From assembly GCA_907165135.1 (NCBI GenBank), contig OU015567.1, forward strand, positions 11,594,001 through 11,658,000: a stretch of DNA of 64,000 bases. Direction: 5' to 3'. Positions 16,788-57,176 of the stretch are shown here, in pieces (within the stretch, counting starts at the first letter, position 1; each line of letters begins with the position of its first letter). Position numbers and translations under genes: made by a program. The notes beneath the pieces were generated by a model, which was given only the letters and a program-made list of their open reading frames with translations, searched no databases and was not told the origin of the DNA. The stretch comes from Oikopleura dioica (Eukaryota; Animalia; Chordata).

Positions 16788-19176
16788 ATGAAAACTTCTG
16801 CGTTTCTTCTTTCCGCGGCGAGAGCGACCTGCCCGGAACAATGTGCCTGCGAGGGTACTGTTGTTGACTGCACTGGCGCCCAAGTTCAGTAAGTAAGCGA
16901 TTTCGCCGACGCTACCTTCAAGCTAGAATTATTTCCAGTCACTACGGTTTTGCGAGTTGAGGTTCTCGCTTTATCTGCTTTTTGCTGGAGACATAAGAAA
17001 GCAGCCAATACTGCCAAAAACTGAAAAATATATCAACTTTTTGGAATCGGTGCTGAAACAATACTCAAAGATCTTAAGCTTTTGGCAGATGAAATTTTCT
17101 CTCGTCAAAACTAATCGTTTTTGCAGGTACATTTCTGAACTGGACTTTCCATCAGATGTGACTGAAATCAACTTGTCCGACTCCTCTCTTTCTGCTTTGA
17201 GAAGCTTCGACTTCAACGGTGATAATGGAGATTTTGCAAATCTCGAGACTGTCATCTTCGACAACGCTGAAATCGAGTACATCGACGATTCTGCTTTCGC
17301 ATACTTGCCGAGTCTGAAATCTGCTTCGTTTGCTGACTCTTCTGTTTCATATGTCAGGTAGGAAACAGCTCGTACTATTGCTTGAAGCGAAGTTTTTCCC
17401 AGTCACTACGGTTAATTGATGAATAACTATCAATTTATCTGCTTTTTGCTGGGTACACCAAAATGGGCTTATACTCTCGGCAAAGTGACCTCCATCGTTT
17501 TGATCGTTTTTAAAGTTCCAAACAACTGTAATTGAAATATCAAATATTTCTTTCGCTGAAAACGGTTTTAAATTGATCCTAGCAAGAAGGCATTCTACGA
17601 ATGCGACAAAATCGAGAACGTAGACTTCTCAAATACGAATCTCAAATATCTTGACGCGCACTTTCTCATCTACGCGGATAACTTGGAATCGCTGAACGTA
17701 GCTGGAGCTGCCGAGTGCGACTGCGTCAACAACTGGATGAAACTGTCAGGAAAGGTTGTCGATGAGTTACCTGCTGTCAAAATGAAAGTTCTTCCTAAGC
17801 CACCTTTGTAAAGACTTCGATGAAATCATTTCCGGTTACGACTGCGAAATTAACCTTGATGATGCTTCAAAATGTGCGCCAAAGTCTGTTCTTCCCGATT
17901 ACGTGTTCACTTTTCAAGAAGGTCAGCCAGCAACTGCAATTGTAAGTAGTGATACTTCCTATTAGCTTACCTTTGCCACCCAGCTATCAAGGCTTGACGA
18001 TTTTGAAATAATCGTTCGAGTTTGCTTTTCCTGGGGAAAATAATAGATTGCTTCGAGTTTGACTATTGAGTCGGAGAATGTGTGAATGATGAAAGTGCAT
18101 ATTTCTTCGAATTTCTATAATTTTTCGGATCTCAGTCTTACAAATCTTTACTTGTCGATAACACGATTACCTTGAGTTTTCTAGTGTTTCATCGTTGGTT
18201 CCGACATAATGACCATCGACGTCCAAAACGGTGGAAAATATCGAGGACAGCGAATCAGCCTTTACAATGTCGGAATCGAAAACCACGACGAGTACACTTG
18301 CACAGCCAATGCTCTCAATCACGAGTCTGTTCAGAACTTTTTTACCATCAATGTCATCTCAAGGTGAGCTTCCATCTTGAGCCTCATTTTTCATTGATCT
18401 AGTGAGGAAGCCAATGAACCAACTGCCGATGATGCGAGCACTGAAGAAGAAGTAGTAGAAGTTGATGATGATGATGATGATGAGAATGAGGTTGACAATG
18501 CACAAGAAGATAACGATGATGATGAAGACGCAGAGGAAGTCATCGAAGAAAGTGAAGACAATGAGTCAGGTTCGAACTCAAAACGCCTTCAGGGCTAGCC
18601 ACTTACCAACCAACCAGTCGCTCTCGCTTACCAAAAAATTAAGAGGACGATGAACCTAGTGAGGTCACATCAGAAGTTCTCTCCACAGAGCGACCAGACG
18701 AATTGGAAGTTATCTCAGAGGACCTAACTGGTAACGACAGCGAATCTTCTGAAGAAGATAGCGAAGCAAGCTCTTGGAAAGATGTTAGCGCTAATACAGG
18801 TAAAATAAATATCAAAATGAGATGATAACCCAGATCTCTCCCCCGCCGACTTTCCAAGTAGTCGTTTGGGTTTTCAAAATCTGGGGACAAAAAAAAAGAT
18901 TGATTTCAAGGTGAATCGTGAACGTATTCTAAATTCACTCGGGTTCCAATCTAACAAGCTAAAACTTCAAGCTCTGATCATAAACATTAACATCAACTTG
19001 TAGCATGTCTGTTCGGCGTTCTTTGCGAAGAAGGAAGCTCCGAAGGAAGCTCAGAAGGCAGTGGTTACGACGGTAGTGGCGATACGGCTGAATACTCGTC
19101 AGCAATTTCTCTTCGATTCTCCTCCATGTCTCCAGCTTCGCTTTTGCTTGTACTCCTCGTCGCTTGCCTTCTGTAA
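16788..19176 (+). CDS. Secreted LRR + Ig-like + acidic-stalk protein with a probable GPI-anchor signal
   Basis: Signal peptide, LRRNT CPEQCACEGTVVDC, LRRs (FANLETVIFDNAEIEYIDDSAFAYLPSL), LRRCT ECDCVNNW..C, Ig-like DEYTCTA, a D/E-rich stalk, EGSG/DGSG motifs, and a hydrophobic C-terminus SLLLVLLVACLL*. Confidence 0.8.
16934..17063 (+). ncRNA. Candidate box H/ACA snoRNA 1 (intron 1 of the LRR gene)
   Basis: Hairpin TCCAG..CTGGA with an internal pocket, H box ACATAA (16991-16996), second hairpin CAGC..GCTG, ACA at 17058-17060. Paralogous to copy 2. Confidence 0.72.
17398..17527 (+). ncRNA. Candidate box H/ACA snoRNA 2 (intron 2 of the LRR gene)
   Basis: Hairpin CCCAG..CTGGG shares the pocket strands TCACTACGG and TATCTGCTTTTTG with copy 1 but has a different, still-paired upper stem. 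H box ACACCA (17455-17460), second hairpin, ACA at 17522-17524. Confidence 0.72.
17979..18145 (+). ncRNA. Candidate box H/ACA snoRNA 3 (LRR gene intron)
   Basis: CCCAG..CTGGG hairpin, H box AAAATA (18037-18042), AGATTG..CAGTCT hairpin, ACA at 18140-18142. Confidence 0.6.
18829..18959 (+). ncRNA. Candidate box H/ACA snoRNA 4 (last intron of the LRR gene)
   Basis: CCCAGAT..ATCTGGG hairpin, H box ACAAAA (18887-18892), AGATTG..CAATCT hairpin, ACA at 18954-18956. Pocket strands are complementary to a conserved 28S rRNA segment. Confidence 0.78.
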
Positions 19177-20079
19177 ATAAAAAATAGCTTGTCATCCTTC
19201 ATCAATTCTTCTTCTTCAAAAGAAACCAAAGAGCATTTGTGTAAACAAAAGAACTCTTACGAGAGCTACTTCAGACAAATTTTGTTCATTCAGACGAGTG
19301 AGACAAATGAGCGGTGCAATTTCGAATATTTCGCTAGCCCAGAATTATATCCTTGTGATTCATATTCCGCGCCCGTAACCTTACAAAACATCTATCACGA
19401 GCCATGTGACGAGCTCTTTAACAACGATAATGAGTATATGACGTGAGTTGCTCGGCGTTAAAAAACATAACACCAAAAGTTCAAAATTTCCATAAAAGTC
19501 TGTTCTGACGAATGAGCGAAATAAGCCGGGAGATCAAGTTTGTTTAAAAATCACTTTATTTCAATAGATCCAGCAGTCGAAAAGACACAGTGAGAGTACA
19601 GTATAAATATGTTTTTAATTAAATGCGATGAGTTCCGTAATTTTATTATGGAATGAAGTAATCACAGGGAGATTTAATAAGCTTTAAATTTTAGCGTTAT
19701 TTTATTCTGGAAGTGGATATTTGAAATAAAAGAAATGAAAAATTTCATATTGCAAAGACAAGAAATTTTAGCTGAGCAAGACGAGAGAACATATAAATTT
19801 GCTTTTCGTTTTAATTAAAGAGCGAGTAATTAAACGAGTCAAATAAAGTTTGCAACACTTTTAACGGTTTTCTTTAAGTTTTCAGGATATGTATTTCAGG
19901 ATATTATTTTTTAAAAATAAAAGCTTATTTAAAAGCTAGTTACTAGCTGCTAGTTGATGTTAACTTTAAATTTTAAAGTTTAAAATCAGAAGAACCAAAA
20001 AGCAGTCGTATCGTTAAACGATTAAAAAAGAGCTTGACTTATTTACTCGATGTGATATAAATATCTGTAGCGAGTAGTG

Positions 20080-25620: not shown

Positions 25621-25789
25621 CTTGCCCGAGATCACTTCAATCAGCTGTTTTCTTCAAGTCTCTCAAGATTCCAAAATTGTGTCTTAGGGCGTTTGAGAAA
25701 AACGAGGCTCGACCAATCGGCGCGGCGCGAGAATTCTGCACCACTTCGCGAAGAAGGAAAATTGAAAAGAGAAAAACGCGAATCAAAAA
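25621..25789. promoter_or_regulatory. 169-bp bidirectional promoter between the PMPCB-like gene and ATP6V1F
   Basis: Divergent ATGs at 25620 (-) and 25790 (+). CCAAT at 25713-25717 followed by GC-rich GGCGCGGCGCG. Confidence 0.65.
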
Positions 25790-27212: not shown

Positions 27213-29456
27213 ATGACAGACAATAAAGCATATTCTGCTGAAGTAAGTTTAGGTGCATGAAGCTGGGTCAAAATAACTATTATTCGAAATTGGTGATGAT
27301 CTTTGTATTCTAGTGGAGGAAATTTAAGATTCCTTGTTCGTTCAGATGACCGAAATCGGGGTGGGCGATGAAACTCCTTCGCCAGAGAATTCGAACGAAA
27401 CGGAAGAAGTCGAAAACGAAGTAGAAGTAGCGACCTACTTCAGCGAGAGAATTCATGTCCCAGAGTCTCAGAAAGCGTTTTCATTCCGGAAATTGTGGGC
27501 GTTTACTGGTCCGGGTTTTCTGATGTCGATCGCATACTTAGATCCTGGGAATATTGAGTCGGATTTGCAGAGTGGGGCCATTGCTCAATTCACGCTGCTG
27601 TGGGTGTTAATGTGGAGCCATGTTTTGGGCCTGTTTATGCAGCGATTTGCGCTCAGACTCGGAGTTACTACCGGTAATAATCTGTCACTTGAGTTAGTTT
27701 AAAACGAGAACCGGTTTTAGGGAAGCATCTGGCGCAAGTCTGCTACGACGGCTATTCTCCTCCAGTGCGAATTCTTCTCTGGCTTTCGATAGAATTAGCC
27801 ATTATCGGCAGCGATATGCAAGAAGTAATTGGCACGGCCATCGCGTTCTCTCTTCTATCAAACGGTGCGATTCCTCTCTGGGGCGGTGTGCTCATCACAA
27901 TTGTCGACACAGTCGTTTTCCTTTTCCTCGACAAGTATGGCCTCCGAAAGTTAGAAGCATTCTTCGCAGTTTTAATTACGACAATGGCGATTTCCTTTGG
28001 TTTCGAGTACGTCCAAGCTGCGCCCGATCAAAAAGAAGTTGTTTACGGCATTGTTGTACCTCACTGCACCAATTGCGGAGTTCCTCAGCTGGCACAAGGA
28101 AAAGATTGAAATATTCGAGCGAGTAAGCACGCGTTCCATCGTAATTTAAACTCATAATCATCCAACTTTGTCAATAATAACTGTACTTAATAATCGCTGC
28201 ATAAAACTTCAAAGAAGTAATTCTCAATCTTCCCAAAGCAATCGGAATAATCGGCGCCGTCATTATGCCCCACAATATTTACCTGCACTCCGCTCTTGTG
28301 AGATCCCGAGAAGTAGACAGAAGAAAGCCAAAAGAAATCAAAGAAGCGAACATGTACTTTTTCATTGAATCCGCGATGGCATTGTTTGTTTCGTTCATAA
28401 TCAATGTATTCGTCGTTTCTGTTTTTGCAGAAGGTTTCTACGGGAAAACGCTGGAGAATTTGAACACCACCGCTACTGGTAAGCTTGATTCTCAATTATA
28501 TTAAATTTTTATCGGACTGATACGTTCTTTGAACATTTAAAGGTCACTGTTAAAATGATTTTGATTTTAGAGAATCTCTTGAAGGGATTCTTCAACCAAT
28601 AAATCTGATTTCGTAGCTTTTTACGAAGATGTACTGCACTCGAACCCGCCCTATTCGATCTTCCCCCTCGAAAACGAAGATGCGAACAGTACAGATGTAG
28701 CAGTAGATATATTCAAAGGAGGAGTCTTCCTCGGCGCTGAATACGGTCTGCCAGCATACTACATCTGGGCCGTCGGAATCTTTGCAGCTGGCCAGAGCTC
28801 AACCATGACCGGCACTTATAGGTGAGTCTTGCCATTCTTTCCACTTATGGAAAAAGCCTACACGTGTTACTCTCCTTTTCAGTGGCCAGTTTGTCATGGA
28901 AGGATTCCTCAATCTTCAGTGGTCCCGTTTCGCCCGAGTCGTTCTCACTCGCTCTCTGGCAATCGTGCCTACTTTCGCCATTGCCTTTTACTCGGATATT
29001 TCGAGCTTGACCAACATGAATGATATTTTAAACATCCTTCAATCGATTCTTCTCCCTTTCGCGATTATCCCTGTTCTTCATTTTTGTGCTCAAGCGAGGT
29101 TAGTGCCATTATTTTGCTTGAAATGATGAATAATTCAGAATAATGGGTGAATTTGCGACTGGAAAGTTTTGGACTATCTTCGGTCCATTGGTAGCTTTTG
29201 TGATTATTGGAATCAATTTGTATTTTGCTTACGATATCATTATTGGTTTTGAAAAAGTAGCTGCGTATGCGATTTCAGGAGTCATTGCTGTCCTCTACTT
29301 CAGTAAGTCTGAATGGATTTATCGATATTTATAATTCTTTCAGTCTTTTGCTTCTACATGATCTGGCTCTTCTTCCGCGACGCATTCCTCCCGCGGCTAC
29401 GATCGCTCTTCTTTCACAGCGGAGAGGACGAAGAATTACTGGTCGACGACGAGTAG
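27213..29456 (+). CDS. SLC11A2: NRAMP/DMT1 divalent metal transporter
   Basis: [82 protein letters not shown]. Includes GA-AG intron 28099-28238. Confidence 0.96.
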
Positions 29457-30339: not shown

Positions 30340-33300
30340 ATGACGATTCCAGTGCTCGATTTATTCAACTTTGAAAGCGACTCGGCTGAAGGATGCGAGG
30401 AACGGTTCATTTTAAATCTGATGAAATGTGGTATAATCTAACTTACAGTTATTTTCCTCTTTTGTGGACATTTTTTGTCACAAATTTTCGGAAAAATGTC
30501 CACAAAAATGGGCAAGGGTTCCCAAAAAAATGTCCCGCCGTAGTGTATTAAAATTTTTTCAAATATAAGTTTTTATGGAAAAATGGCGAATTTCATCCTC
30601 GAAACGCCTTTCTCTTGCTTAAATTAATTTATGAGGCTGTTGTACTCAAAATGGAGCATTTTCAGGAGGTATATTTGATGAAGATTATTACCTCAGTGAG
30701 TATGATTATCGATTAAAAACTGTAGTTGGTTACCCCGGACAAAATGAGATCTTGAGTATTTATCTTGAATACGGCAAATCCAACTAGGGACAATGGAAAT
30801 TTTGAATCTTGAAAAAAGTATGTCTTGACGTCACCAAGATCGCTTCAAGCCTGCGCTGCACTGGACATTCGACCCGTTGAGCTTTTAAAGGTAACTAATT
30901 TGAAAGATGTATTTTTGAAGGTGAACTTGAATGTTGTATCTGTAGTTGTCATGCAGTATTTTGTCAATAAGGTCAGATTTGCCTTTTTGAAGTCAATTAG
31001 TTTGCAGAGCTTTGCTCGCTAAGGACTGATAGTGTCAAATTGTTTGGCTAATCGAGTTTCGGATTTTGGAAGGAACTCTATGCAGATCAGAAATGAAGCC
31101 TTTAATTTGTTTGTCATACTTAGGAAGTGCTTAGGAAACGTAAGGGCTACAATTTTGGATAAATCGACATGAAGCCCTTGTTTTCGTCTTGTATTCTTCC
31201 TTGTTTTCAACATCAAAGAGGCATCAGAGCTCGTGATGAAATGCGCCATACAAATCCACTAATCCCATGTCACATTGTTTCTTGTGCCAGGAATCAGCTG
31301 TACGGCGGGAGCTAAGGCCTTTTTTTCTATTGAAAACACTTTTAATCTCCTCAAATCGCCAGAACCATGGCAATGAAAAACTGCCATCCACAGGCGGCTT
31401 TTTGGAACTTGGATTGAACTCAGGAAGTTCGTTTTAGCGCAGAACTTCGAGAAATAAATTGCACTAGAATAAAAAGTGTACTAATGGGAAATTGGCAAGC
31501 GAAATGGCGAGGGAAAAAGGTGATTGATGGGAGGTTGGCATGCGCTAAAACGCAAAGTTGGCCGCAGCCTGCTGCTAGTGCAGAACCGCTAGAACAATTA
31601 AAATGATGATTTTTGAGAAACTAAGCTGAGTTTGACACTTTCTCTTTTTCGATAATATCTTGTTTTCATTAAAAAAATCCTGTTGAACTCGAACAGGAAT
31701 CGATTTTTGGGTTCAGAGAGTCAGAAGAGTTTCAGTCTAGGGCTTTATAGTTATGATCAATTGAACAAGAACTAGTGAATCCACTTTTGAAGTCGAGTGC
31801 TTTTGAGCTTGATTAATTCTCTTTTCTTATTTCAATTAGTGCCGGACCGAGAAATGAGAAATCGCCAGCTCAGTGTTATCTTAATAATAAAGCCCGTCCG
31901 TGGCTGTCGGCACTGTGGGAACTCTGTATTGAAAGAAATTCAGGTGACGCTCAACGAGCTGGTAGCGGAGAGACCAGAGTTGTCGATCAGAGAAGCGAAG
32001 GAATTCCTGGCGAAAATCAACGAAGAAAGAGATGAAAAGCTGCAGGAAGCTAGGGTAGCGAGGAAAAGGATCATCGAGGGTCAGCCGGTGAAAAGACGCA
32101 ACGAAGAACCAAACAAGGAAAGGGGATGCAATTGAATGGGTGAATTAAGATCTTGTATCTATAAGACGTCGAACAACCCAATCCACATTTTGCAAGTTTA
32201 TTGATTGCTCGCAGCTTATGCTTTTATTTTATCGATGGCACTTGAAACTAACTTGAACCTTTATTCAAAAATCGAGAAATTCATTTGCACCAACTACATG
32301 CATCTCTTAAAAAGCCCTCGAAAATGCAGAAATTCACCTCTGAACCGACTGTAAGAAGTCAACCATCTCGTGGAACGAATATGATCAAATCCTCAAGGTA
32401 GTTTTTTGAGCTGAAATCATCAAAACCAAGAGATAACGGGTAGTTATTCCAGGACTTTTGAATAATTAATCGTCCGCGGAGAGTTGAATGGATAAAAATT
32501 TTAGTGTTCAAATGATCCATTTAGTAGACTCATGTAGAGAACGGATGGAAAAGAATGAATAAAAGTACCTTGATTTTAGGTTTTCTAAGTGATCTTTTTC
32601 ATCCCCAAAGCTCGTTTTTCGCCTTGAAAGATGAACTTTTCATAGGATAAGGATTATAAAATCGCTTTGATTTGGCATTTCCTGTCTGATTCTGATTCTG
32701 AATCTGAAATCTCGATTTTCAGCTCGCCTCACGTCAGACCTCCGGCGAAGTTGACCCCACTGGGGTTGTCTATGACCAAAATCCCTTCCATCGGCTCATC
32801 CGCATCATCGGTCGTCTCTTCCTCCCGCCGCCGCAGTGACCATGACCGTCTCATGAACGCAATGATAAGGCGATACCACGAGAAAAAGAAGGAGGCCAAG
32901 AACTCCCGAGAAAAATGGCATCAATGGGAACAAGATCGCCTCAAGACTGAAAGAGAGAAGATGAAAGCCCAAAGAAACACGCAGGTTAGTCATTAAATTT
33001 TTTTGATTGTTTGGCATAGCAAAAGATTAGCTATTTATTCAACGAGACAAGCTAAATATTTGATGTTCGTGTGAGTTTTTATAAGAATTTATCCTTCAGA
33101 CAACTCGACTCAAAAACGGCTGTTATGAGATAAATGTATTGATTTTCTATTTTCGCTCTCGTTTTCGATTCAAACTATCGTTCAATAGTCAATTGCCCAG
33201 TCAGTTTATAAAAGAGACGAAATTAAAATGACCCCGTTATAATTCTTTTGTCGTTTGTCAACAAAAGTACTGTTAAAGCTTTGATTTAATTACTGTTTAT

Positions 33301-36135: not shown

Positions 36136-37736
36136 ATGGTCCTTCAGTATGCAGAAGGTTAGTCAAAAAAGCGTAAAAAGAGGTGTTAGTTTCAAAGATA
36201 ATTAGTTTTGAAAGAATAGGGTGTTTTAGAGAAGATTTAATGAAGGCGAATTTTGTATAGGGTTAGAGCAGAAAGTGGACTTACGAAGGGTAAATTTGGA
36301 CGCTCTCAAGCCATGGATAGCTGACAAAGTCTCAAGGCTGCTCAACTCTGAAGACTCTGTCAAGGTACAGTTTCGTTCGATCGTCATTTTGTAATCTCTG
36401 TAGGTACCTCCCGATGTTGCTATAGACTATTGCTACAAACAACTTAGCTCGAAAGGGATTCTCCCAAATGGGAGGCAGATGCAGGTCAGTCAAGCTTTCA
36501 GAAGATCCCTTTTCAATCAATTCAGGATTCAATATCAACATTAATACAGGGAAAACCCGCAAGACTGTATATGGCGGAGCTGTGGCCACTACTTGTCTCC
36601 GCCCAAAACGTAGGTACCCCCAAATCTTCGCTGTCCAGAACACCCTATTTAGAGTCCTATGGGTATTCCGATGGCCATGATTGAGGCTAAAAAGCGTGAA
36701 ATCTTAGCCCGGGAAGGGAAAAAATCTAAAATTGACAAAATCGGTAAAAAGATCGACTCGGCGGTAAATGACTTGAACGGTAAGAAAGATCATCAACCAG
36801 TCCTCTTTTTATGTGTTTTTCAGACAAAGCTGTCGAGGAAGGAATGCGTAAGTACAACGTTAATTCCGGGAATCGGGTTTCTAAGATCCGCGACGCCAGT
36901 CGGGATAGAAGTAGATCTAATTCAAAACGAAAGCGCAGGTAAATTTGACAGTAAAACGACAGAAAGCTGAATCCCATTTGTTTAGTAGAACGCGCTCTCG
37001 TTCAAAAGAGTCAAAAAAGAGATCCAGCTCACGTCGACGCTCCAAGTCCTGGTTACCTCTTTAAAATCCTTTTTCTTTTGACTAATTAAAACTTCGTGAT
37101 AACCGAAAAAGTCCCGGACGAGGTCGAAATCCAGGTCGAAGTCGAGGTCGAAATCGAAGAAAAGATCAAAGTCAGAAGAAAAGAAGCGTTTGAAGAAGAA
37201 GAAAGAGGCGAAGAAAAAGAAAAAGGTATGGAAAATTATCGTTTCAAAAATAATTTCATTCTCAGATTGCATCGAAGAAAAAGAAGGCGAAATTAGAGAA
37301 GAAGAGAAAGAAAAGAAAGAAAGAAGAGTCATCATCTTCGTCGTCGTCTTCCAGCAGTTCTTCTTCTGAGAGTTCGTCTTCGTCCGACTCCGATTCTGAG
37401 TCCGAAGAAGAGAAGAAGAAGAAAAAGAAGTAGGTTCTATTTTTTTATTCCCATTTCTATAAATAAATTAAGGAAGCAACGAAAGAAGAAGCTGTCGAAG
37501 AAAAAATCGTCCAAGAAAAAGTCAAAGAAGAAAAACGACAGCGACTCGTCCGACTCTTCTGATGAAGATTCTCAGGTTGAACAAGGTGGTGTCCCAAGAG
37601 GCTCCAGAGGGGTTTTACTAACTCGTGTTCAGACGGAGACGTGCCGCCAGAAGCTGAAAAACCAAAGTCTTTGAGCGAGCTGGAGAAAAAACTTCGCGAA
37701 CGAGCTATAAGCTCCATGCGCAAAAAGAGCGCATAA
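36136..37736 (+). CDS. SRRM1: SRm160 / serine-arginine repetitive matrix protein 1 (PWI domain), compact form
   Basis: KVDLRRVNLDALKPWI..YMAELWPLLVSAQN..GIP..KKREI, RS/K-rich and S/D-rich tracts, and C-terminal LEKKLRERAISSMRK. Confidence 0.88.
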
Positions 37737-38287: not shown

Positions 38288-41200
38288 ATGACAATAAAAG
38301 ATTATGTGTCGCCATATGCAGCTGTTTCCGAGGTGCAGGAAAAGTGGAAATTAGTACCCGCGTTTTTGGAAAGTAGAGGACTCGTCAAGCAGCATTTAGA
38401 CTCGTTCAATTATCTTCTGACACAAGGACTTCAAAAAATTATAAAAGCGAATGCGCGCACAGATGTTGATCAAAACTTCTTTTGGAATTACGATAATATT
38501 TACGTCGATCCGCCAGATGTTGAATATGGCATGAGAAGTGAGGCAATTACTCCACATGAATGTCGACTTAGGCTTGAGTTCGCAAGTTGTCTCTTTTGCG
38601 AGACTGAAGTGGTTCAATTTGTTGAACTCTTAAAAACAGAGACATGACATATTCGGCGCCAATTAAAGTTGATGTTACTTATGTCCGTGATAATCAAATT
38701 AGAAAGGCGCGAGGTCTGGTCATTGGCCGAATGCCCATCATGTTGAGGTCGGCTAGGTGTGTTCTAGCGGGGATGTCGCAGGAGCAGTTTTTTAAAGCGA
38801 AGGAGTGCCCTCTCGATCCTGGAGGGTACTTTATCGTCAAAGGAACGGGTGGTACACTTCACTTTTGGATGCGTTGTCACGAGTGACGTACTGTATCTCA
38901 TAAGCGGCTAATCGATTAAAGTCAGTGCTACCCCATTTGATAAGGTGCGGAAAAAGTGCTATTGATGCAAGAACAAGCTGTCTCTAATCGCATCCTGGTT
39001 GAGAAGGACAAAACCGGAATGTTCTGCGCAGTCGTCAAGTCAAAATCGGACACGGCGAATACCCAAACGAATCTTATCCAGTCGAAGAATAAAATTTACG
39101 TGAAGCAGAATAAGCTGCGTGAGCCTGTCAATGTTGTCGTGCTCTTTAAAGCGCTGGGAATCGAGCGGGATCAAGAAATCGCCGAATTGATCGCCACCGA
39201 GGACTCCACCTTGGCGCTCCTGGCGCCCAGCTTATTCGAATGCCAGCAGCTTGAAATCTTCTCCCAAAATCAAGCGATGAAGTACCTGGAAAAGACAATC
39301 ATGCGCATCCAGAACCCGATAGTTTCGCGATCGCAGATGCAGTCGCGCTTTCAAACCAGAACACCTCGTAACAGAGAACAAGAAGTCCATGTATGGCTCT
39401 GTAACACATTGCTGGTCAATGTGCCCTGTAAAGATTTTAACCTGTACGAGAAAGCTGTTTTTCTTGGACTTATGTGTCGACGACTTCTTCAAGCGCAACA
39501 AGGCATGATCAAAGCTGACGATAGAGATTACTACGGAAACAAGCGAATTCAGCTAGCGGGGGATTTGATATCCTTACTCTTCGAGGAACACTTTAAAAAT
39601 TTCAACGACGAGCTGAAACGTACGATTGGGAAGAAACTTGAAAAGAAAACAGCGCAGGGGAGGGGTGACATGACTGCGGCCAAGTTTGAATAATTGCTGC
39701 CTTTCACTTTTGAATTTATTATGGTCGTCTTTGGACTGCTCATTTTGGCCTTTTAATTAGACGAAAAGACAATTTTAAGGACAGTAATTAACATTAGAAT
39801 CGTCTTAAATCAGCACCCCTTTTTGACAGGTCGTTGACGTAATATCATCAATGAAATCACTACAAAACAAAATCACTCTAGCAATGGAAGCGGCTATTCA
39901 AACCGGCAACTGGAATCTAAAACGTTTCAAAATGGACCGCAAAGGCATCACGGAAATACTGAATCGAATGAGTTTTATTTCTATAGTGTTTGGGTTGTCA
40001 AAAATGCACATTGTTGTCGCGCGCTTGAATCCGTTATGCGCGACTGAAACGTGCTTTTCTTTTATTTGATATTCGTTCCATTTGTTTTTCAACCTACTTT
40101 CCAGTTGGCACAATGACCCGAATCAAGGGACATTTCGAAAAGACGATGAAAGTCACGGGACCCAGAGCGCTGCAAGGATCTCAATGGGGAATGCTCTGTC
40201 CTTCTGATACTCCTGAAGGGTGAGTTGACTAGAAACTTTCCGAGAACAAGTTTGGGTTCACACCGTTGTTGAAAATAAAGATTGTAAATCAGACTGCTCA
40301 TTTAACTGAGTCAACCACTCAATTTCCTGTTTAGGGGAAACAAGTATCATAGCCGGTTTTTGGGGTATTATGGGTTATTATCAGCTCGCGGATAATTTTC
40401 AATTGAAGTTAGATTGAACTTTAGATCTCTAATTGAGCCTAGTTCCGTCTTCTAGTGAAATCTTGTAACGAATTTGTCCCCTCTAAATTTCCACTTCCTG
40501 ACCGAAAACCTCGGCGTAAAATAGAAATTCTGCTTCGCTTTCCAAAATCACATAACGCCCAATCTCATAGTTGATGTAACGATCAGAACCAGACTTGTTC
40601 CGGAAAATTAGATTTCCCCTGGCGACCGACCTAGGACCTTCTCGCGTGGTAGAACTTGGCGAACGTGAAAATTTTGTTTAGAGCGCAATGTGGCCTTGTC
40701 AAGAATATGGCGCTCATGTCACACGTGACGACATTCGAAGATGATAAGCCGATCCATAGGCTTCTTATTAATCTTGGTGTGGAGGTTAGTAATCATTGAT
40801 ATTAATATTCGATGCACGTTTTCAATATTTTTTACTTCTCGCCTTGATTTTTATTATCAGTAGTCCAAAGTGTGGCCACGAAATGGCCATGGTTAGTTAT
40901 AAGTCGAGCGGGTTCATGGAACTGGAATATCGCAAAATTTCGAGCTTTCTTTTGCACTCGAAAACGAGGTCATCAAAGACTATTTTAGACAGAGCGAGAA
41001 TTCAAAAGCCGGAATGGAAGGCTTCGAGGTTGCTTCTCGTCGCTTAGTACGGGATTACCGCTACCAACGTTGCATGTTTACTTATGAACTTTGCGCGGTG
41101 CCGTTAACGAGTGGTTAGACGAGCGACGCTTTCGCTTTTCTTTCTTGAGCCTTCTATTTCCGGCCTAGTGCCAGGAACGATGTTAAATTTGCGTCTAGGA

Positions 41201-43663
41201 AACGAGCACTTTATCTGGCTACGATTTGCATGGTGCAAATTATTTGGTGTTTCTAAATGGCGCACTAGTTGGCGCCACGCGTAACCCAAAGAGTTTGACG
41301 CGCACAGTGCAACTCATCAGAAGGGCGGGTAGACTTCCTGAGTTTGTTTCGGTCTATGTCTCGGAGGAACATCGAGCTGTTTATCTCGCCTCGGATGGCG
41401 GAAGACTCACCAGGCCCTGTATAATTGTTGAAAATGGTAGGCCTAAGGTAACGACATTATTTGAGTTTATTTTTCCTAATGTTTCGACTAGGTCACCCAA
41501 AAGCATATCAACGCGCTACTGGAAGGCAAGGTGAAGTTTCCGGACTTTGTCAAAAACGGCCTCATCGAGTATTTGGACGTAAACGAAGAAAACAGCGCTC
41601 TAATAGGCACCCGGATTAGACAATTGTTTAAATACCAAGTACACGTAATGTTAAGTACGGACAGTTGTCCTCTTCGTTTTTCCCTGTTATCGTGTAACGA
41701 TATTTCCCGTACATTGCTTATCCAAATTAAAAGCCGTTTACGAACGTGATATCACAGAGCAGCATACGCATTTAGGTTGGTTGGAACATTCTTAGCCTAG
41801 TTTCTAAAGCGAAGTTTATCTTTTCCAACCTTTTTAAAAGAAATTGAACCCTTCGCCTTACTCGGAGTCTGTGCTGGTTTGATTCCTTACCCAGATCACA
41901 ATCAGTCACCAAGAAATACGTATCAATGTGCCATGGGAAAGCAAGCTATGGGTACAATTGCAATGAATCAAAGAGAACGAATCGACTCCTGCTTGTACAA
42001 TCTTGTTTACCCGCAACGCCCGCTGGTGAAGACGCGAACTATTGAACTCATCGGTTTCGAGCAACTCCCAGCTGGTCAAAATGCGACTGTTGCTGTAATG
42101 TCTTATTCTGGCTATGATATTGAAGACGCGTTAATTCTGAATAAAGCTTCTGTCGACAGAGGCTACGGACGATGTCTGGTTTATCGTAACGAAAAGACCC
42201 AGCTCAAACGTCAAGGAGGACTTGTTGAGACTATTGAAGAAAGAATCGATGGTCCAGCGCTCGATGCTCAAAGTGGGGAGAAAATCCGCGCAGATGAGTG
42301 CCTTGACATGGATGGAATCGTAGCACCGGGCGAGAGAGTCAAGGAACGGATAGCTAATCAATCTTTCCATTTCCACCCAGATAATCCTCTGGGTTCACAA
42401 AAGCTTGACGGAAATTTCGAGTGTGAATCGAATTTTGGCTATCTGATTAACAGGAGTACCATAAGTTAATCAACAAAGTGGTCTCAAAAGTTGTGGCAGG
42501 GGAAGGTAATCTACCACAGGATGAACCGAGGGCGATTAGAGCTCCAACGATGGCGAAATCGCAGCCAATTCACATCGGCACGGGTTAGACAGTTCTGAGG
42601 GCATATATTATAATATCAGAGGGTTGGGCGTTAGTTGATCTTGAACACGGCTGTCTAACCAACCGCTAGAGCGAGTTATGATCTCAGAAGATGCAACGTG
42701 GCGAATGGTGAAACTTTCTTACCGACAGACTCGACGGCCGGAATTAGGTGAGACATTTTCCTCGAAGCTCGTTCGATTTTTTTTTACGAATATATAATAC
42801 TAATATAACTATCATTTTCAGGCGATAAATTCTCGTCACGTCACGGACAAAAGGGTGTTACAGGGTTAATCGTTCCACAAGAAAATATGCCCTTCAACGA
42901 GATCGGAATGTGTCCAGATGTGATTATGAACCCTCACGGTTACCCATCACGAATGACAGTCGGCAAGTTGATGGAATGCATCGGCTCGAAAGCAGGTGCA
43001 CTCTCTGGAAAGTTTCACTACGGTACTGCGTTCGGCGGCAATACGACGGAAGAAATGGCGCAGACTATGTTAGACTACGGATTCAATTACTATGGAAAAG
43101 ATCTACTCATGAGTGGCGAAACAGGAGAACCTCTGGAAGCTTATATTTTCATGGGCCCAATCTATTACCAGAAGCTGAGACACATGGTTATGGACAAAAT
43201 GCACGCTCGTGCTACTGGAAAGGTCCACAATTTAACTCGACAACCACTAGAGGTAGATAATGAGAATGTTTCTGGTTTTAACATAATTCAGGGACGAGCA
43301 AAAGACGGAGGACTGCGACTAGGAGAAATGGAACGCGATGCATTGCTGGCTTACGGAGCATCGAACCTCTTGAATGAGCGATTCTTCTATTCAAGTGATA
43401 AATATAGGGTTTGCTAAGGCGATACTGGGTGCGATTGTTTAATAAATTTAGGTTGAAATTTGTGGCGATTGCGGGCTTCACGGCTATTCCGGATGGTGCC
43501 GCGTTTGTAGAACGGGAGAACATATGGCAAGGTAAGAATCCTTCGAATAGAGCTGTGTTTTTCATTTTTTAGTATTAACATGCCGTATGCGTGCAAGTTG
43601 CTGCTGCAAGAACTATTCTCGATGAATATCATGCCGAGGATACAATTGAAAAGCCAACTGTAG
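38288..43663 (+). CDS. POLR3B: RNA polymerase III second-largest subunit (RPC2), 15 introns
   Basis: [104 protein letters not shown]. Confidence 0.97.
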
Positions 43664-45292: not shown

Positions 45293-46852
45293 ATGAAGCT
45301 CGTTGGATTGCTGGTTGCTGCTTCTCATGGGCAACTTTTGCCGAAACTCGAGTTCAAGGGAATGCCTGTACCAGGCCCGGAGTTAAATATTTTCGATCAT
45401 TTTCTAAAGATGATTTTATTGAAGCCTTTTATTTAATCCGAATAAAGCGCATCTTCTGAACATTGAACCAAAAGATCTTGAGTCACAGAGCTCGTCAAAA
45501 GCAGAGACGACTACTGTGATGCCAAGTACATCAACGATTACCACTTCTCGTGCGTCATCTACTGTTACAGAAAGTATTGTAACAACCACTACAGATTGGT
45601 GAAAAAAGAGTCTAGAATGAGCACGAGATTTTAACTATCTAAATAACACGATAAATGCTTTTTATATATTTTCACCATAAATGAAGACAGTTCACAAGCA
45701 ACAACCACCCATGCAACAACAACAGAAGCTGCGCAGAGCATCGAAGAATTCTTATTTTCAATGGAGAACAACGAAAATTCCAGCGTCTCAGGAAGCGCTA
45801 CATTTAAACCCCCGTGATATTAAAATTTGACATTTTTGAAAAGCAAGAGAACAGAACCTTTCAGTGACATTAAATGACTTTTCACGAGCAAGATACTTTG
45901 CATAATACGAAAGAAGTGAACTTGAAGGGGACTTTTATTTGATTAGCGAATAAAATAGACTCAAGAAATGAGAATGATACGACCAGACCGTCGAGGGGAT
46001 CTTTTGATTTGAAAGCAGCGATGGAAGAAAGTCGGGCGCAAGGATATGGTGAGTTGATCATGTTCTTGAAAACATGATAATATGAGAATGATTTTTTACT
46101 GATTTATTTTCAGGATCAGTTACTGGAGCGCGGCTGAGATTCGCCGGAACACCTTTGGGAGACGTAGCGCCAATTTATTTGTGCAAGAATCGCTCCGGAA
46201 ACCACTGCTGCGACAATAAAGATCCCGACTGCTTCACGCCCGGTGGCTGCTTCTGCGATTCGTCATGCCGAGCGTTTGGTAAGTCTCATTTTCGATGAAA
46301 TTGTGTACGACCCAAATTAGGGGGTAACGAAGATCAAGAGTCAAGAACTTTCGTTGCACGCAATGATTATGCTAAGAACACGTTGGGTTATCAAGTTTTC
46401 AACTCTAGAATAAATGCCAGCGGATCCTACTAAAAGCCTCTAATTGCGGCGGAGAGAGAGGCGCTCTGATCCACCTCAAACCCCCCGTTGTGTTCGTGTC
46501 TTTTAAGATTCATTTCAGACGACTGCTGTCCGGATTTTGAGGACGAATGCGTCGATAAAAAGTGTCTTGAAGAGACTAAAAAGAATTCAGGTTAGTTTTT
46601 GATAAAGGCTGAAAAATTTCGAAGAGCAGTTTAGATTTAGAAAAGGGTAACAATGTTTTAGCTGGAAAACTCGCGCTCCGAGGAATCGAGTTGCGGCGAA
46701 TGAGACATCCCGAGGTGATCATGGTCGCTTCAGGAGGTCAACCAACGCACGTAGAACCAGACGGCTGTTGCAACGGTATTCCATACAATCATGGAATCAA
46801 ATGCTGCTGCAATGGAGCTCTGACTGATCAGTGTCCTTGTCCAGAAACTTAA
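45293..46852 (+). CDS. Secreted protein: Ser/Thr mucin-like tract + somatomedin-B domain + di-Cys C-terminal motif
   Basis: Signal peptide MKLVGLLVAASHG, T/S-rich exons, GCFCDSSCRAF|DDCCPDFEDEC (SMB), GCCNGIPYNHGIKCCCNG..CPCPET*. Absent from the ORF track; needs GC-AG and GA-AG introns. Confidence 0.75.
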
Positions 46853-51585: not shown

Positions 51586-51695
51586 GTAAAGAAAACTGTA
51601 AAATAAAAAAATCTCTAGAACAGCTGTTTATGAAAATATTTAAAAGCTGAAAATCGTCAGTTTAAGTCTTGCGCTCAAAGGGAAAGCAGCATGCC

Positions 51696-52477
51696 TAGGG
51701 TGGGGATACAGAAAATGGACTTTTTACTCGTAGCAGCAACGATAAAAACTTTTTGGGATAAGTTATTTTATTGCCAACCAAAAAAAATTCTTGAAAAAAA
51801 AATTTTGAATTTTGATTGTCACGTGATGAAAATCGCCATTAAAAGTGCCAAAAATGCCAAAATAGCCGAATGAACATGGATTTTTTTTATTCTCGGATAT
51901 GTGATAGAGAATTTGATTCTGAATCTAATGGTACCAAAATCTTTTTGGAATTGCATCGAGAAGGTACTTTAATCTACAAAAAACTGCTATATTACGTAAT
52001 AATTGATGACGTCATAAGCAAAAAAACACTGTAAATTACTGTAAAATGTAGTATTATAAGTGTTGAAGGTCATAGAACGACTGTAATTGACTCCGTAGAG
52101 TACATTTTGTTGGTTTTAGGTGCAAAAACTGACTTTTAAAATAACCATGACGTCATTAGTGATGACTCATTTTCCAAAATTATTACGTAATAAGGCATAT
52201 AAATAGTCATTATGGATCTTTAGGAGGCCGATTCCAAAAAGATTTTGGTACCACCAGATTCAGAATTGAATTCTCTATCACATATGCAGGAATAAAAAAA
52301 ATCGATGTTCATTCGGCGATTTTAGCATACATTTAGTGCTTTCCCACGTGACCTGAAAAAATTTCAAAAAAATTTTTTTTGCCAAAAAATTTTCTGGGGC
52401 TGATTCCATCTTGTCACCAAAAATAAAGTCTCTACGACGTTTGCTGAGAAAGCTCATTTTTTTGTGTCCCCTCCCTA
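51696..52477. mobile_element. Non-autonomous palindromic hAT-like element, 782 bp
   Basis: Ends TAGGGTGGGGATAC..GTGTCCCCTCCCTA. 8-bp TSD AGCATGCC at 51688-51695 and 52478-52485. Long imperfect internal inverted repeat (GCCGAATGAACAT..GGTACCAAAATCTTTTTGGAAT). Confidence 0.9.
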
Positions 52478-52792
52478 AGCATGCCGGAGGAAACCTTCAA
52501 GCAACGCGCCTCGAGGCGAGGAAGCATGTTCCAGCCGAAGAGAGAGATCCCCCGAGATTCTACAGCAGTTGTAAGTACACTCAAAGCTCTTCTTGTTGAT
52601 TGATTATTTCACAACAAGTCAGAGGACGCAGTTTCTTGTGTACTTTTAGTCGATAATTTGTTTACTGAAAAGTTCTCTTCTTGCACCTCTGGGTTATTTG
52701 AGCGCAGTGTCAAGTTGACGGCAAATCCTAGCGTTACAATCAGTCAACTAGGCCAGTACTTCAACAATCGACACTTTAGTAAACAGGAAATT

Positions 52793-52805
52793 GGGTCCTA
52801 GCAAC
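52793..52805 (+). promoter_or_regulatory. Possible RFX X-box
   Basis: GGGTCCTAGCAAC has a strong TAGCAAC half-site and lies ~40 bp upstream of a ciliary dynein light-chain ATG. Confidence 0.45.
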
Positions 52806-52844
52806 ACCCAAAAGCGGGAAAACTAGAAAGAGAAAAACAGTTTT

Positions 52845-53577: not shown

Positions 53578-53792
53578 TCACCGACAAACTGATATTTTAT
53601 GGACTTGTACTCGAATAAAAAATATGAAACTGCTATAAAACAATGCAAAGAAAAGCTCTTTTCAAAGTTTTTCTTGGTAGCAACTATGACATCAATATTC
53701 TTAGCAAGAAAGGTAGAGCAAGAAGAATTCTTCATTGTGAAATATTCGAGAGAGATTTTCGACTGAATGAAATGTGATAACCGACCTTTGGC

Positions 53793-56700
53793 TTACTCAT
53801 GGTCATTTAGGCTTCGATGAAAAAGACCGTCGAGCTGATAATAGAAAACTAAGTAATTTCAACCGATGACCTTTTCCTGATTGGATATAAGAGGAACTTT
53901 GACCGTTGTCTTCTCTGATGAGCTGTTTTTGAAGACAAATGCTCTGTCTTCTTCGTCGAATCCATACATACACATTGCGTGCTTGATGTTTTTCAGCTCA
54001 GTTCTAAGCATCGATTTAAAACACGATTAAATTTGTTGATATAACTTGACTGGGCAAACAAGAGTCTTTTTAGAATCTATGGCGCTGAAGAAATCTCCAA
54101 TGATTCCGAATTTCTTGAAAGTTGCCGGAAATTTGTCAAATTCCGTGGGATGTGAATACACTTCCAGCACTGGTTGAACTTCCCCGATTCGATAGAAGAT
54201 TGGTTTCAAGCTGCCAAGAAGGTGTATACCTACATCAGTTAAACAATTCAGAAACAACACATTCTTAACCTTCTCGCTGGAGAAATGTCGGGCGTGAAAG
54301 TCTTTGCATGACATGGTGAAGCAAGGCAGCTTGTATTTCATCTTCGTTTGCATTTATTTTAGTCGGAATAACGTTCATCATCAATTCTGATCTCAAAGTC
54401 TACCGAAATCTAAATATACTTTGCTCACATCAGACTGCTGACCTTGTGATGCGACGGATCGCCGAGAATCTTTAAAATTGCATCCCTATTTTCTTCCGTC
54501 AGATCTGTATTGTCTCGTTTTCGTTATCTAGTGGTTTTAGTGAAAATAAATCAGAAATAGTATAACGAGTCCTTTGATGGTTTCACGGAAGGAAGATCGT
54601 AACATGCTCGCAGTCGCGAAAGCCCAACATTTGAACGAGTTACCCTATCAATCAAAAATTAAACCAAAGTTAAAAATTTAACCTGTTCATGAATTCTTTT
54701 GCTGATCATTTTAGTCGTCTTTTGAGGATATACTGTTTGTTAGTTCATAGACAATTTTCAATGATTTGAACGATATCCGGCCTTTGAAAGTTCGGCATAT
54801 GATGTAAAACTGTTCAGCGTATCCATGATATTCACGGCCGAGAAAGGACACTGCTCGAATTTCGCTACTCTCCGCTTTACATCACTATCAATGCTCCCAT
54901 CCAGAGTCTGCAAGTCTGCACTGATTCCAAGATCCCTTGCCGTTACTTTCTTGCCGTTCAGAGAGCTTCGATGGTGGGTCAAAAACATCTTGACTTGTTT
55001 TATGCTCGGCCTTTTTGACGGATCATCTGAGATCATTTTGGAAATGAAACATGTCAATTTGTGTTTGAGCGCTTCTTCTTTTGCAGATCGAAGGCTTTTA
55101 CTGTCAACTAAAAAAAATTGATATTTCAGAGAAGAAACTTTCAACCTGGAAGCATGTAGAGCTTGAACGCTAACTGTATATCGAAAATAGAAAGCAGAAT
55201 CGAAATGCCAAGCGAATATATGTCCGAAAGAAAAGGAATCGATTCAGTCAAAACTTCCGGGGCCATGAATAGAGGAGTTCCACCGATAATTCCAGCCATG
55301 CCGAAATCAGCCAGTCGAACGGAAAAAGTGCCGGTTTCATCACTTTTGAGGAGAATATTTTCTGGCTTCACATCGCCATGACATAGACCTTTTTCTCCGA
55401 TTGCCTTCAAAGCAGATGTGACCTATGAATTTCGTGAGTTTTGAACGCGATTATTAAAAACCTGGAGAAAATAATTCATAAAGGAGGACATCTGGAACTC
55501 GATCTGGTTCAATGTTGCATCGCACAACTCGGAAACAATGACAAACTCGTCTTCTCCATTTTTATGTTGCAAGAAGAAGTCAAACATTTTCAAAACATGC
55601 GGATGTCTTATTTCCCTTCCAATGTAGAACTCGGAAGCCTGGCCTCTGAACTGCTGCGCCATTTCCTTTTCTCGCATCGGATCCATTAATTTTTGAGGTG
55701 CTTTTTTAAGAGATTGTACCAGATGAAGTCCGCGATTTGGAATGAACTTGGCCGCTGCATTTTTGCCGTGCCAGGTGCACTTGTAGACCGATCCTTGGCC
55801 TCCGTTGCCAAGAAGATAGTTCTTCTCGATGAGCTGACCGGAAAAGTGTCGCATAGATGGAATCCTTTGCTTACAATTTCTTGGGCATTTCTCATCGCAG
55901 TCAATATTGTAAAGAGACATGTAAGTCGTCGTCAAAGGATTTCCTTCAGATGAGTATCCAGTCACGTACTTTTTCACCAACTCTGCGTAAGATTCAAGTT
56001 GCTGGATTTCGTGTTTATACTGCGTGAATGAGTCCGTTCGGAAATAAAGACTCTTCTCGAGTCTACAGTCTTTTAAATCTTCATGTGCATCGAAAGCGTA
56101 TTCAATCAAGTACCAGTTAACAGCATTTGAGTCAACGGGGCCGTAATTTGAAGCAATAAATGGATTCAAGCCTCGTTCAAGAAGCTTGCTGATGAGTGGC
56201 TGGAAAGTTAAACCAAGACTGTTGGTGTAGAAGCCGCAAAAGTTCATCTCTAAGTTGGGGAAGTTGTCCAAAAGAAAAATTGAAGAGCGATAATAATGTC
56301 GAGTCGCGTAAAAGGGAAATGTGAATGCAAGTTGGGTTGGAATCGAGATGACTTCTTGCGCTTCATCGATCGATATATCGTCAAGCATTTTTGACATCAA
56401 GAAAAGCATGGTCTCATCATTTGATGTCTGCATTTCGAATATTTCTTTTTTGGAGTATGCGCATTCCATGAACAATATTCTCATAATGAATTCGTTCGGC
56501 GCTGTGAAAACCGTATATCCACCAATACTGTATGTCCAATCGATCGAATCTTTTGAAAGAAAATTCAGTGTTTGAATTAAAAATGCCTACATTGATCCCA
56601 GAATTGACTCTTCAGTATATCGAAATTGAAAGTGAAGCTTGCAACAACCCGAAAGTGACTTGCACAAGCTCCATTTTGCAAGTCGATCTTCATGAGTTCT

Positions 56701-57176
56701 TCAAAAGTGTGCGGATCAGTGTTTTGCGTCTTGTACTCGTTTTCCCGATTACTTTGTTTCAGAACCAAATTAAGACCTTCAAAATGATTAGTGATGAATT
56801 TATAATTATAACGCAAACCTGCGTATCCTCCAGGAAGATTAAGGGTTTCCTTCCGTGAATCAATCCGATAAAGTTCTGTTTCGAGCTAAAAGGGAGCAAA
56901 GAGTTGTTTTCTATTTATACTTTTATGAAGACAGTGACCCCTTGCCTTGTGAAAATGTTCTGAAAGAGAATAGCCTTCGTCATTATCGCCAATGAGTTTT
57001 TTTAACCTTTTATACACAGCGATTGCATCAAGAATATCCGCGTCCGAGGATCGCTGAATAATCGTATCGTAAAGAATCAGTCTCCCTGCTGCGAGTTTAG
57101 AAATCGTTCCAGCATCTATCATTTTCGTCGAGGCCAAGCTCCAGAATTCAAGTCGACTCATCTCTGAGGTTCCCAT
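53793..57176 (-). CDS. Multi-domain protein: unknown N-terminal region + Ser/Thr kinase + papain-like (C1) cysteine peptidase domain
   Basis: Kinase motifs LGNGGQGSVY, AAAK, HGDVKPENIL, DFG, GTPLFMAPE, SDIYSLG, KRPS. Downstream in-frame exons give HEQ|GNSFKCWAFA, KHAMCMYGFD, FVFKNS. The 3' end is approximate. Confidence 0.75.

What the first reader, a model, noticed from the sequence alone, without database searches (positions are those of the whole stretch)
17750..56945. A class of stem-closed non-canonical introns: a short RNA helix clamps the two ends of non-GT introns across 7 genes
Seen in sequence: nearly every intron that needs a non-GT donor to keep frame or homology has a stem starting about +2..+7 and pairing with a segment that ends 6-11 nt before the terminal AG. 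Cases: 17750-17813 GA (AAAGGT/ACCTTT); 28099-28238 GA (AAGATTGA/TCAATCTT); 30400-30818 GA (GGTTCA/TGAATC); 32118-32314 GA (AGGGGATGCA/TGCATCTCTT); 38572-38639 GC (GAGTTC/GAACTC); 38843-38944 GA (GGGTGGTAC/GTGCTACCC); 39658-39829 GG (AGGGGTG/CACCCCT); 41607-41733 GC (GGATTAGACAAT/ATTGCTTATCC, imperfect); 42344-42453 GA (GGATAGCTAA/TTGGCTATCT); 42578-42669 GC (GGTTAGACAGT/GCTGTCTAACC); 45375-45447 GC (CGGAGTTAAATA/TATTTAATCCG); 45792-45958 GA (CGCTA/TAGCG); and on the minus strand 54514-54571 GA (TCGTTAT/ATAACGA), 54733-54777 GA (GTTCA/TGAAC) and 56886-56945 GC (GCAAGGGG/CTCTTTGC, from +1). The stems differ in sequence and often use G-U pairs. The GT-AG introns I checked mostly lack such a stem (exception 41776-41840). 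Established knowledge: Oikopleura has many GA-AG introns; Fritillaria has TIR-bearing, MITE-derived non-canonical introns; euglenid nonconventional introns pair their ends. Inference: RNA structure at a near-fixed geometry substitutes for the GT in donor selection, rather than the stems being leftovers of one transposon family.
Basis: partly seen in the sequence, partly recalled or inferred. Interest (0 to 1): 0.92.

Follow-up and report, generated by a model that had tools for sequence, protein, structure and literature searches.

The report
Stem-clamped non-GT introns of larvaceans
In the plankton chordate Oikopleura, introns that lack the usual GT start have two ends that base-pair into a short helix, probably inherited from the small transposons that created them and kept because it helps splicing, which may explain how this animal removes its many rule-breaking introns.

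Summary
The window is Oikopleura dioica (Okinawa, chr2). All 17 non-GT introns pair their ends (median -9.0 kcal/mol versus -3.5 for 42 GT introns, p=5e-9; mismatched-end permutation p=2e-5). Spliced mRNAs of a sister lineage confirm the RPC2 junctions.

Corrections: 54733-54777 should be GC-AG 54719-54781, and two introns starting TC and TG were missed.

The pattern recurs in two other O. dioica lineages and in other larvaceans, at their own intron positions, including introns starting TA, CA, CG and CT. The helix arms are better conserved than the interiors over about 25 My. Own ends pair better than cross-lineage chimeras (p=0.005). Column-wise compensation and G-U bias were not significant.

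Young insertions still show perfect inverted repeats plus a target-site duplication carrying the AG; old introns have lost the duplication but kept the helix.

Best model: transposon-born (introner) introns whose inverted repeat is retained as a splicing aid replacing GT and the pyrimidine tract. Function is inferred, not shown.

The parts
17750..17813 (+). GA-AG intron, LRR/Ig-type gene; helix +2:-7, 6 bp
   Evidence: frame only (in-frame stop, no GT donor of the right phase); stem
28099..28238 (+). GA-AG intron, NRAMP; helix +4:-8, 8 bp
   Evidence: junction matches homologues
30400..30818 (+). GA-AG intron, coiled-coil DUF4659-like gene; helix +5:-11; one C-G/T-A compensatory pair vs Norway
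   Evidence: Norwegian orthologue
32118..32314 (+). GA-AG intron, same gene; helix +4:-7, 10 bp (weaker, interrupted in Norway)
37047..37111 (+).
   Evidence: spliced mRNA L001
38572..38639 (+). GC-AG intron, RPC2 (GA in the other two lineages); helix +5:-11
   Evidence: mRNAs L001/L022
38843..38944 (+). GA-AG intron, RPC2; helix +5:-12, 9 bp
39658..39829 (+). GG-AG intron, RPC2; strong helix. The same site holds a 45-nt GT intron in lineage B and a stemless 50-nt consensus-type GC intron in Norway
39987..40104 (+).
41607..41733 (+). GC-AG intron, RPC2; helix +7:-11, short core
41776..41840 (+). GT-AG intron with the same helix (+4:-11) and A-rich tail; G-C/A-T compensatory pair
42344..42453 (+). 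GA-AG intron, RPC2; helix +4:-9, 11 bp
42578..42669 (+). GC-AG intron, RPC2; helix +6:-10, 11-12 bp; about 80% identical over its whole length between lineages
45375..45447 (+). GC-AG intron, cysteine-rich secreted-type gene; 4 bp + bulge + 7 bp; inner helix fully replaced in Norway
45792..45958 (+). GA-AG intron, same gene; helix +5:-11
54514..54571 (-). GA-AG intron, kinase; helix +4:-8, 7 bp
   Evidence: public model P0357 and paralogues
54719..54781 (-).
   Evidence: paralogues L017, L023 (two copies), P0359
56886..56945 (-). GC-AG intron, kinase; paralogous copies start TA, GA and GC

Best explanation
These are introner-type introns processed by the single U2-type spliceosome. Origin (inferred): a small non-autonomous DNA transposon with terminal inverted repeats inserts into an exon and duplicates 7-11 bp containing an AG. 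Removing the element plus one copy gives an exon ending in AG, an intron ending in AG, an arbitrary first dinucleotide, and an inverted repeat set in 2-5 nt from the 5' end and 5-10 nt from the 3' end. Many different elements did this. Maintenance (statistically indicated): the interior and the duplication decay, but 5-12 bp of the repeat persist because the pre-mRNA helix is needed. Function (inferred): the helix holds the two ends together while the intron is defined. The cut sites are then fixed by the exon-terminal AG and by distance from the helix, replacing U+2 (sometimes G+1) and the pyrimidine tract, whose place the 3' arm occupies. The helix covers +5/+6, which must pair with U6, so it is probably unwound before catalysis.
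For: Shown: stem enrichment in three O. dioica lineages and in other larvaceans, 8 non-GT vs 5 GT, p=0.002. Exon-terminal AG in 16/17. Register 3-7 in 16/17. A-rich, T-poor last nucleotides vs GT introns, p=1e-4 and 7e-6. Arm identity 0.78/0.69 vs 0.44/0.42 inside, with GT introns at 0.51/0.40. Own ends beat cross-lineage chimeras at 13/16 positions, p=0.005, GT control null, difference p=0.01. Three lineage-restricted insertions keep duplication remnants (14/19 matches beyond the AG vs 0.24-0.29 background); two have near-perfect 14-15 bp repeats, and an outgroup intron has a 17-bp perfect repeat. 0/8 stem-bearing vs 4/7 plain RPC2 intron positions are shared with an outgroup, p=0.026. The one clearly stemless non-GT intron has a consensus U1-matching GC donor. 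Known: O. dioica has only the major spliceosome and non-canonical introns are enriched among new introns (PMC4122922); Fritillaria non-canonical introns derive from TIR elements and need the U2 spliceosome (10.1101/2025.08.15.670264, PMC11282704).
Against: No experiment. Column-wise compensation does not beat the GT control (14/50 vs 21/86, p=0.69). No G-U over A-C asymmetry. Several helices are weak (about -5 to -7 kcal/mol), and one is not in the minimum-energy fold (38572). Old introns show no duplication remnant and no family similarity, so their transposon origin is extrapolated from four young cases whose windows were read off the stems. The sample is about seven genes, and the orthologous sets are not independent. 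The arms may be conserved partly as sequence signals (G at +5/+6).
Confidence: 0.62

Rival explanations
1. Neutral relic: the inverted repeats are transposon leftovers. A permissive spliceosome uses only linear signals (exon AG, G+5, terminal AG), and the apparent conservation reflects those signals.
For: Young cases look like MITEs. No G-U asymmetry, and column-wise compensation is at control level. m6A on U1 in O. dioica offers a structure-free route to permissiveness (PMC13326754).
Against: The equally old duplication has decayed to chance (0.24) while the helix persists across a split of about 25 My. The 3' arm is conserved at -9..-16, where GT introns are not. The chimera test is positive, whereas neutral decay predicts zero.
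Confidence: 0.14
2. One reading: the helices arose or were built at RNA level by selection on introns that lost GT, with no transposon origin.
For: No interior similarity or duplication remnant among old introns. Inner helix segments turn over completely (45375). One site holds GG, GT or GC introns in different lineages.
Against: The youngest introns have the longest, most perfect repeats plus duplications. Stem-bearing positions are lineage-specific gains. A GT intron (41776) has the same helix.
Confidence: 0.1
3. The helix is selected for another job (folding away a long intron, mirtron or circular RNA production, or avoiding cryptic sites), not for choosing splice sites.
For: Non-GT introns are longer (58 nt or more) than most GT introns. 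42578 is conserved throughout.
Against: Long GT introns lack the helix (median -3.5). The helix stops short of the termini, unlike mirtrons (own knowledge). No Rfam match in any intron.
Confidence: 0.08
4. Non-spliceosomal, euglenid-like excision by a structure-recognising nuclease and ligase.
For: Similar sub-terminal end pairing and no pyrimidine tract (PMC11282704); a pyrimidine at +1 is tolerated.
Against: AG at -2/-1 is invariant, G+1 is dominant and G+5 frequent. The same site toggles between GT, GC, GA, GG and TA. The related Fritillaria introns need the U2 spliceosome.
Confidence: 0.05

Closest known systems
Fritillaria borealis non-canonical, MITE-derived introns (PMC11282704, PMC13326754)
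   Same: Larvacean, U2 spliceosome only, TIR plus target-site duplication, lineage-specific positions.
   Different: Fritillaria ends are mostly AG-AC/AG-AT, with splice sites at the TIR itself and duplicated U2AF. Here the 3' end is AG, the repeat is set in from both ends, most cases are old and family-less, and the repeat shows signs of selective retention.
O. dioica GA/GC/GG-AG atypical introns (11-12% of introns; PMC4122922, PMC8008620, PMC7072748)
   Same: These are those introns.
   Different: The papers I could read describe only linear consensus and a permissive spliceosome, and report a U-rich tract for the class. The end helix, the A-rich tail and pyrimidine-start members are not mentioned.
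Introner elements of Amoebophrya, Micromonas and others (PMC7789003, PMC9860276)
   Same: 8-20 nt inverted repeats, direct repeats across the junctions, predicted hairpins.
   Different: Those are recent multi-copy families. Here no family is visible in the window and the helix outlives sequence similarity.
Euglenid nonconventional introns (PMC11282704)
   Same: Conserved end pairing beginning near +4, no pyrimidine tract, probable MITE origin.
   Different: Euglenid junctions follow a pyrimidine|purine rule without a required AG, pair +4..6 with -8..-6, and are released as circles. These keep AG and use register 3-7; their excision product is unknown.

Membership tests
O. dioica atypical GV-AG introns | Host is O. 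dioica | tested here: met
   25,376 nt 100% identical to OKI2018_I69 chr2
O. dioica atypical GV-AG introns | GA/GC/GG start, AG end, removed precisely | tested here: met
   15 of 17; mRNAs and models. Two start with T
Introner / TIR transposon-derived introns | Inverted repeats at the intron ends | tested here: met
   sub-terminal
Introner / TIR transposon-derived introns | Target-site duplication across the junctions | tested here: inconclusive
   present in 3-4 young insertions in other lineages; absent in the window's older introns
Introner / TIR transposon-derived introns | Multi-copy family with similar interiors | tested here: inconclusive
   no similarity among non-orthologous introns in about 0.2 Mb; whole genome not searchable
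Introner / TIR transposon-derived introns | Lineage-specific (gained) positions | tested here: met
   0/8 shared with outgroup L011; presence/absence among O. dioica lineages
Fritillaria-type AG-AC/AG-AT introns | Non-AG 3' end with YAY signature | tested here: not met
   all fit an AG end; register favours it
Euglenid nonconventional introns | No conserved AG acceptor; pyrimidine|purine junctions | tested here: not met
   AG end invariant
Euglenid nonconventional introns | Excised as full-length circles without lariat | not testable with these tools
   needs lariat/circle sequencing
U2-type spliceosomal introns | Lariat, branch adenosine, U2 dependence | not testable with these tools
   no branch motif enrichment in either class; U12 system absent per PMC13326754

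The most novel reading that the evidence does not exclude
Oikopleurids run a second, structure-defined mode of U2 splicing for about a tenth of their introns. A domesticated transposon inverted repeat plus the exon-terminal AG sets the cut sites so completely that even G+1 is dispensable: introns starting TG, TC, TA, CT, CA and CG are cut one base downstream of an available GT or GC.
Probability: 0.3. Interest if true: 0.9.

Novelty: new variant of a known kind. Interest (0 to 1): 0.76.

Why it matters
How Oikopleura splices its 11-12% non-GT introns precisely, with a conserved U1 and no minor spliceosome, has been open since 2010. A cis-acting end helix is a concrete answer that can be tested by minigene in a laboratory animal. 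It would link transposon-driven intron gain to a lasting RNA function, show how a chordate spliceosome can bypass U+2, the pyrimidine tract and perhaps G+1, and improve gene models: public RPC2 models fail at the GG and TG introns.

Tried and rejected
- GT-AG alternatives by sliding: none for the transcript-mapped non-GT junctions.
- Length as confounder: long GT introns lack the helix in the window (p=2e-5). In lineage B that contrast is not significant (n=4, p=0.13).
- G-U vs A-C asymmetry: sense vs antisense -10.4 vs -9.4, p=0.19; 11 vs 5 at helix ends against a G-T-rich background. No support.
- Column-wise compensation count: not above control.
- One shared element family: no BLAST similarity.
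- Duplication remnants in old introns: chance level.
- Branch-point motif: no enrichment.
- Rfam: only one tRNA in the window.
- Reverse-transcriptase template-switch artefact: rejected, because the essential RPC2 frame needs these removals.
- One search contained three off-by-one GT introns; these were fixed, and the -5.7 threshold printed there was post hoc and is not relied on.
- A notebook entry saying L008-10 have GC at 39658 is wrong: L010 has GG; only peptide P0001 implies such an allele.
- Denoeud 2010, Henriet 2019 and Huff 2016 were not held.
Full report
Source and material. The window is Oikopleura dioica, Okinawa lineage: 25,376 nt are 100% identical to OKI2018_I69 chr2 (L021). For comparison I obtained the Norwegian locus (L020, GCA_000209555.1) and a third lineage, B (L005, L006, L007, L015, L016). 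I also obtained two fully spliced transcript contigs of lineage B (L001, 99.7% identical to L007/L016 exons; L022, 98% identical to L006) and kinase paralogues (L017, L023). L003, L004 and L011 are more distant larvaceans; they group with O. dioica at 100/100 apart from Ciona. Okinawa split from the other lineages about 25 My ago (10.1101/2023.05.09.539028). The one full-length query was a natural transcript contig (L001). I took no contig for human.

Are the introns real? All listed termini and arms are in the sequence. Aligning the mRNAs gives exactly the stated lengths for the six non-GT RPC2 introns and for 41776, and all RPC2, NRAMP and kinase exons are stop-free in the resulting phases. 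The RNA-hinted public OKI model crosses 38572, 38843, 41607, 41776, 42344 and 42578 and fails at the GG and TG introns. NRAMP homologues fix 28099. Norwegian orthologues support 30400, 32118, 45375 and 45792. 17750 rests on frame only. Two further introns came out of the mRNA alignment without looking at structure: 37047-37111 (TC-AG) and 39987-40104 (TG-AG). Both have helices.

Is the helix more than chance? I computed duplex energy between +1..+16 and -22..-5. The 17 non-GT introns have median -9.0 kcal/mol and the 42 GT introns -3.5 (p=5e-9). The contrast holds against GT introns of 55 nt or more (p=2e-5). Own ends give -10.4 against -5.1 for mismatched ends (permutation p=2e-5), while GT introns give -3.5 vs -3.1 (p=0.054). 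The transcript-defined subset gives p=1e-4. Pairing is confined to the last about 25 nt. The register (3' distance minus 5' position) is 3-7 in 16 of 17, and the helix closes the minimum-energy fold in 13 of 14 introns folded. Lineages B and C repeat the result (p=3e-4, 2e-3). The one clear exception is a 50-nt Norwegian GC intron with a consensus U1-matching donor and no helix. In the other larvaceans, 8 non-GT RPC2 introns at their own positions pair their ends and 5 GT introns do not (p=0.002).

The class differs at both ends. The exon ends in AG in 16/17 and in G in 17/17; G is common at +5 (71%) and +6 (82%). The last nucleotides are A-rich and T-poor: 2.8 A and 1.7 T in -3..-8, against 1.0 and 3.6 for GT introns (p=1e-4, 7e-6). 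The acceptor is purine-AG in 10/17 vs 5/42. The 3' arm sits where the pyrimidine tract would be. The GT intron 41776 has both the helix and the A-rich tail, so the class is defined by architecture rather than by the donor dinucleotide.

Is it under selection? Between Okinawa and the other lineages, identity is 0.78 at +5..+10 and 0.69 at -9..-16, against 0.44 and 0.42 just inside; GT introns give 0.51 and 0.40. Nearly every orthologue keeps a helix. In an alignment-free test, each lineage's own two ends pair better than cross-lineage chimeras at 13 of 16 positions (mean -1.7 kcal/mol, p=0.005). GT orthologues show nothing (p=0.68; difference p=0.01). Neutral decay of a perfect repeat predicts zero. 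Individual compensatory pairs exist (30400, 41776, 37047, 45375), but the column-wise count does not beat the control (14/50 vs 21/86), and there is no G-U over A-C excess. The evidence for RNA-level selection is therefore moderate.

Where do they come from? None of the 8 helix-bearing RPC2 positions is shared with outgroup L011, against 4 of 7 plain GT positions (p=0.026). Lineage-restricted members look like fresh transposon insertions:
- A 456-nt CT-AG intron in lineage B has a perfect 15-bp repeat and a 10-nt duplication matching 7/10.
- A 226/243-nt GC-AG intron shared by B and Norway has a decaying 16-bp repeat and an 8-nt duplication matching 6/8.
- A 395-nt Norwegian insertion has a 14-bp repeat and a perfect duplication; precise removal reads CG-AG. 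Its splicing is not shown, but both Norwegian assemblies encode the same mis-modelled peptide there, suggesting homozygosity in an essential gene.
- An outgroup GC-AG intron has a perfect 17-bp repeat and a 6-nt direct repeat.
Pooled matches beyond the AG are 14/19 against a background of 0.24-0.29 (three events, windows read off the stems). In each case the AG lies inside the duplication, which explains the exon-terminal AG, the free first dinucleotide and the inset helix. In the window's older introns the unpaired ends sum to 6-17 nt with a mode of 10, but the duplication itself is at chance level. The helix has outlived an equally old duplication. No interiors are similar to each other, so many elements, not one family, were involved.

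Pyrimidine-start introns. Seven independent cases start TG, TC, TA (twice), CT, CG or CA after an exonic AG. The mRNA cannot separate this reading from sliding both ends one base left, which gives GT or GC donors with a non-AG end; GT-AA was among the hints allowed in a published annotation. The helix register fits the G-start class when the cut is after AG (p=0.17) and does not fit when slid (p=0.002), and G+5/+6 stay in phase. One kinase site starts GC, TA, GA and GC in four paralogues. One transcript contig has a junction 2 nt short at the CT intron (L024), compatible with either reading or with an assembly error. I favour a dispensable G+1, but only lariat sequencing can decide.

Mechanism. 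Shown: the junctions, the helix statistics, the A-rich tail, conservation, and repeat-plus-duplication in young members. Inferred: transposon origin of the old members, and a role of the helix in holding the ends together during intron definition so that exon AG, G+5 and distance replace U+2 and the pyrimidine tract. From established spliceosome structure (PMC13326754), the bases just inside the 5' splice site must pair with the U6 ACAGAGA box, so the helix is more likely an early, transient clamp than part of the catalytic core. The branch point is unknown.

Comparison and novelty. GA/GC/GG-AG introns of O. dioica are known. TIR-derived non-canonical introns are known in Fritillaria and Amoebophrya, and paired ends in euglenids. 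Nine literature searches found no description of end pairing in Oikopleura introns, but Denoeud 2010 and Henriet 2019 could not be read, so prior mention is possible. Verdict: observation confirmed and extended; interpretation partly supported; new variant of a known kind; interest 0.76.

Noticed in passing
window 49077-50592: 1.5-kb MITE-like element with about 580-nt inverted repeats (93%) and a perfect 8-bp target-site duplication (hAT-like) inside a carboxylesterase exon. The duplication has no AG, so precise removal gives no AG end; a GT donor at its edge with a downstream exonic AG would remove it in frame with loss of 7 codons.
   Followed up: partly
window 51854-52328 (wider element about 51690-52490): Second inverted-repeat element (98-nt arms, 90%) downstream of the carboxylesterase gene.
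   Followed up: no
window 42578-42669: This intron is about 80% identical along its whole length in all three lineages, unlike its neighbours; it may carry a further function. No Rfam match.
   Followed up: partly
window 30718-30818 vs L020 2875-2970: The last 100 nt of the 419-nt intron are 84% conserved with Norway, well beyond the helix arm; unexplained.
   Followed up: no
window 40423-40681 and 41067-41198: Long conserved stretches inside two GT introns of RPC2 across lineages; possible regulatory or antisense elements.
   Followed up: no
window 37586-37632: 47-nt GT intron with an unusual G-rich 5' end whose first about 15 nt are identical in three lineages.
   Followed up: no
L001 1-4832: Transcript contig spanning the PWI-domain gene, the intergenic region and RPC2 with all introns removed: a cis-spliced polycistronic precursor or a merged assembly.
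   Followed up: partly
L024 915-950: Transcript junction 2 nt shorter than in L001/L022 exactly at the CT-AG intron, causing a frameshift; mis-splicing or assembly error.
   Followed up: partly
L007 512-894 vs L006 3872-4327: The 456-nt CT-AG intron is only about 76% identical between two samples whose exons are over 99% alike, while its 5' arm is unchanged.
   Followed up: no
L004 vs L011: Near-identical RPC2 protein over the short stretch compared, but different intron positions: rapid intron turnover in an outgroup larvacean.
   Followed up: no
L020 1-2000 vs window 27346-29460: The Norwegian locus lacks the NRAMP gene at this position (only its last codons match) and has an unrelated gene there, while outgroup L011 keeps NRAMP next to RPC2.
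   Followed up: no
window 16059-16132 (-): One tRNA gene, the only Rfam match in the window.
   Followed up: no
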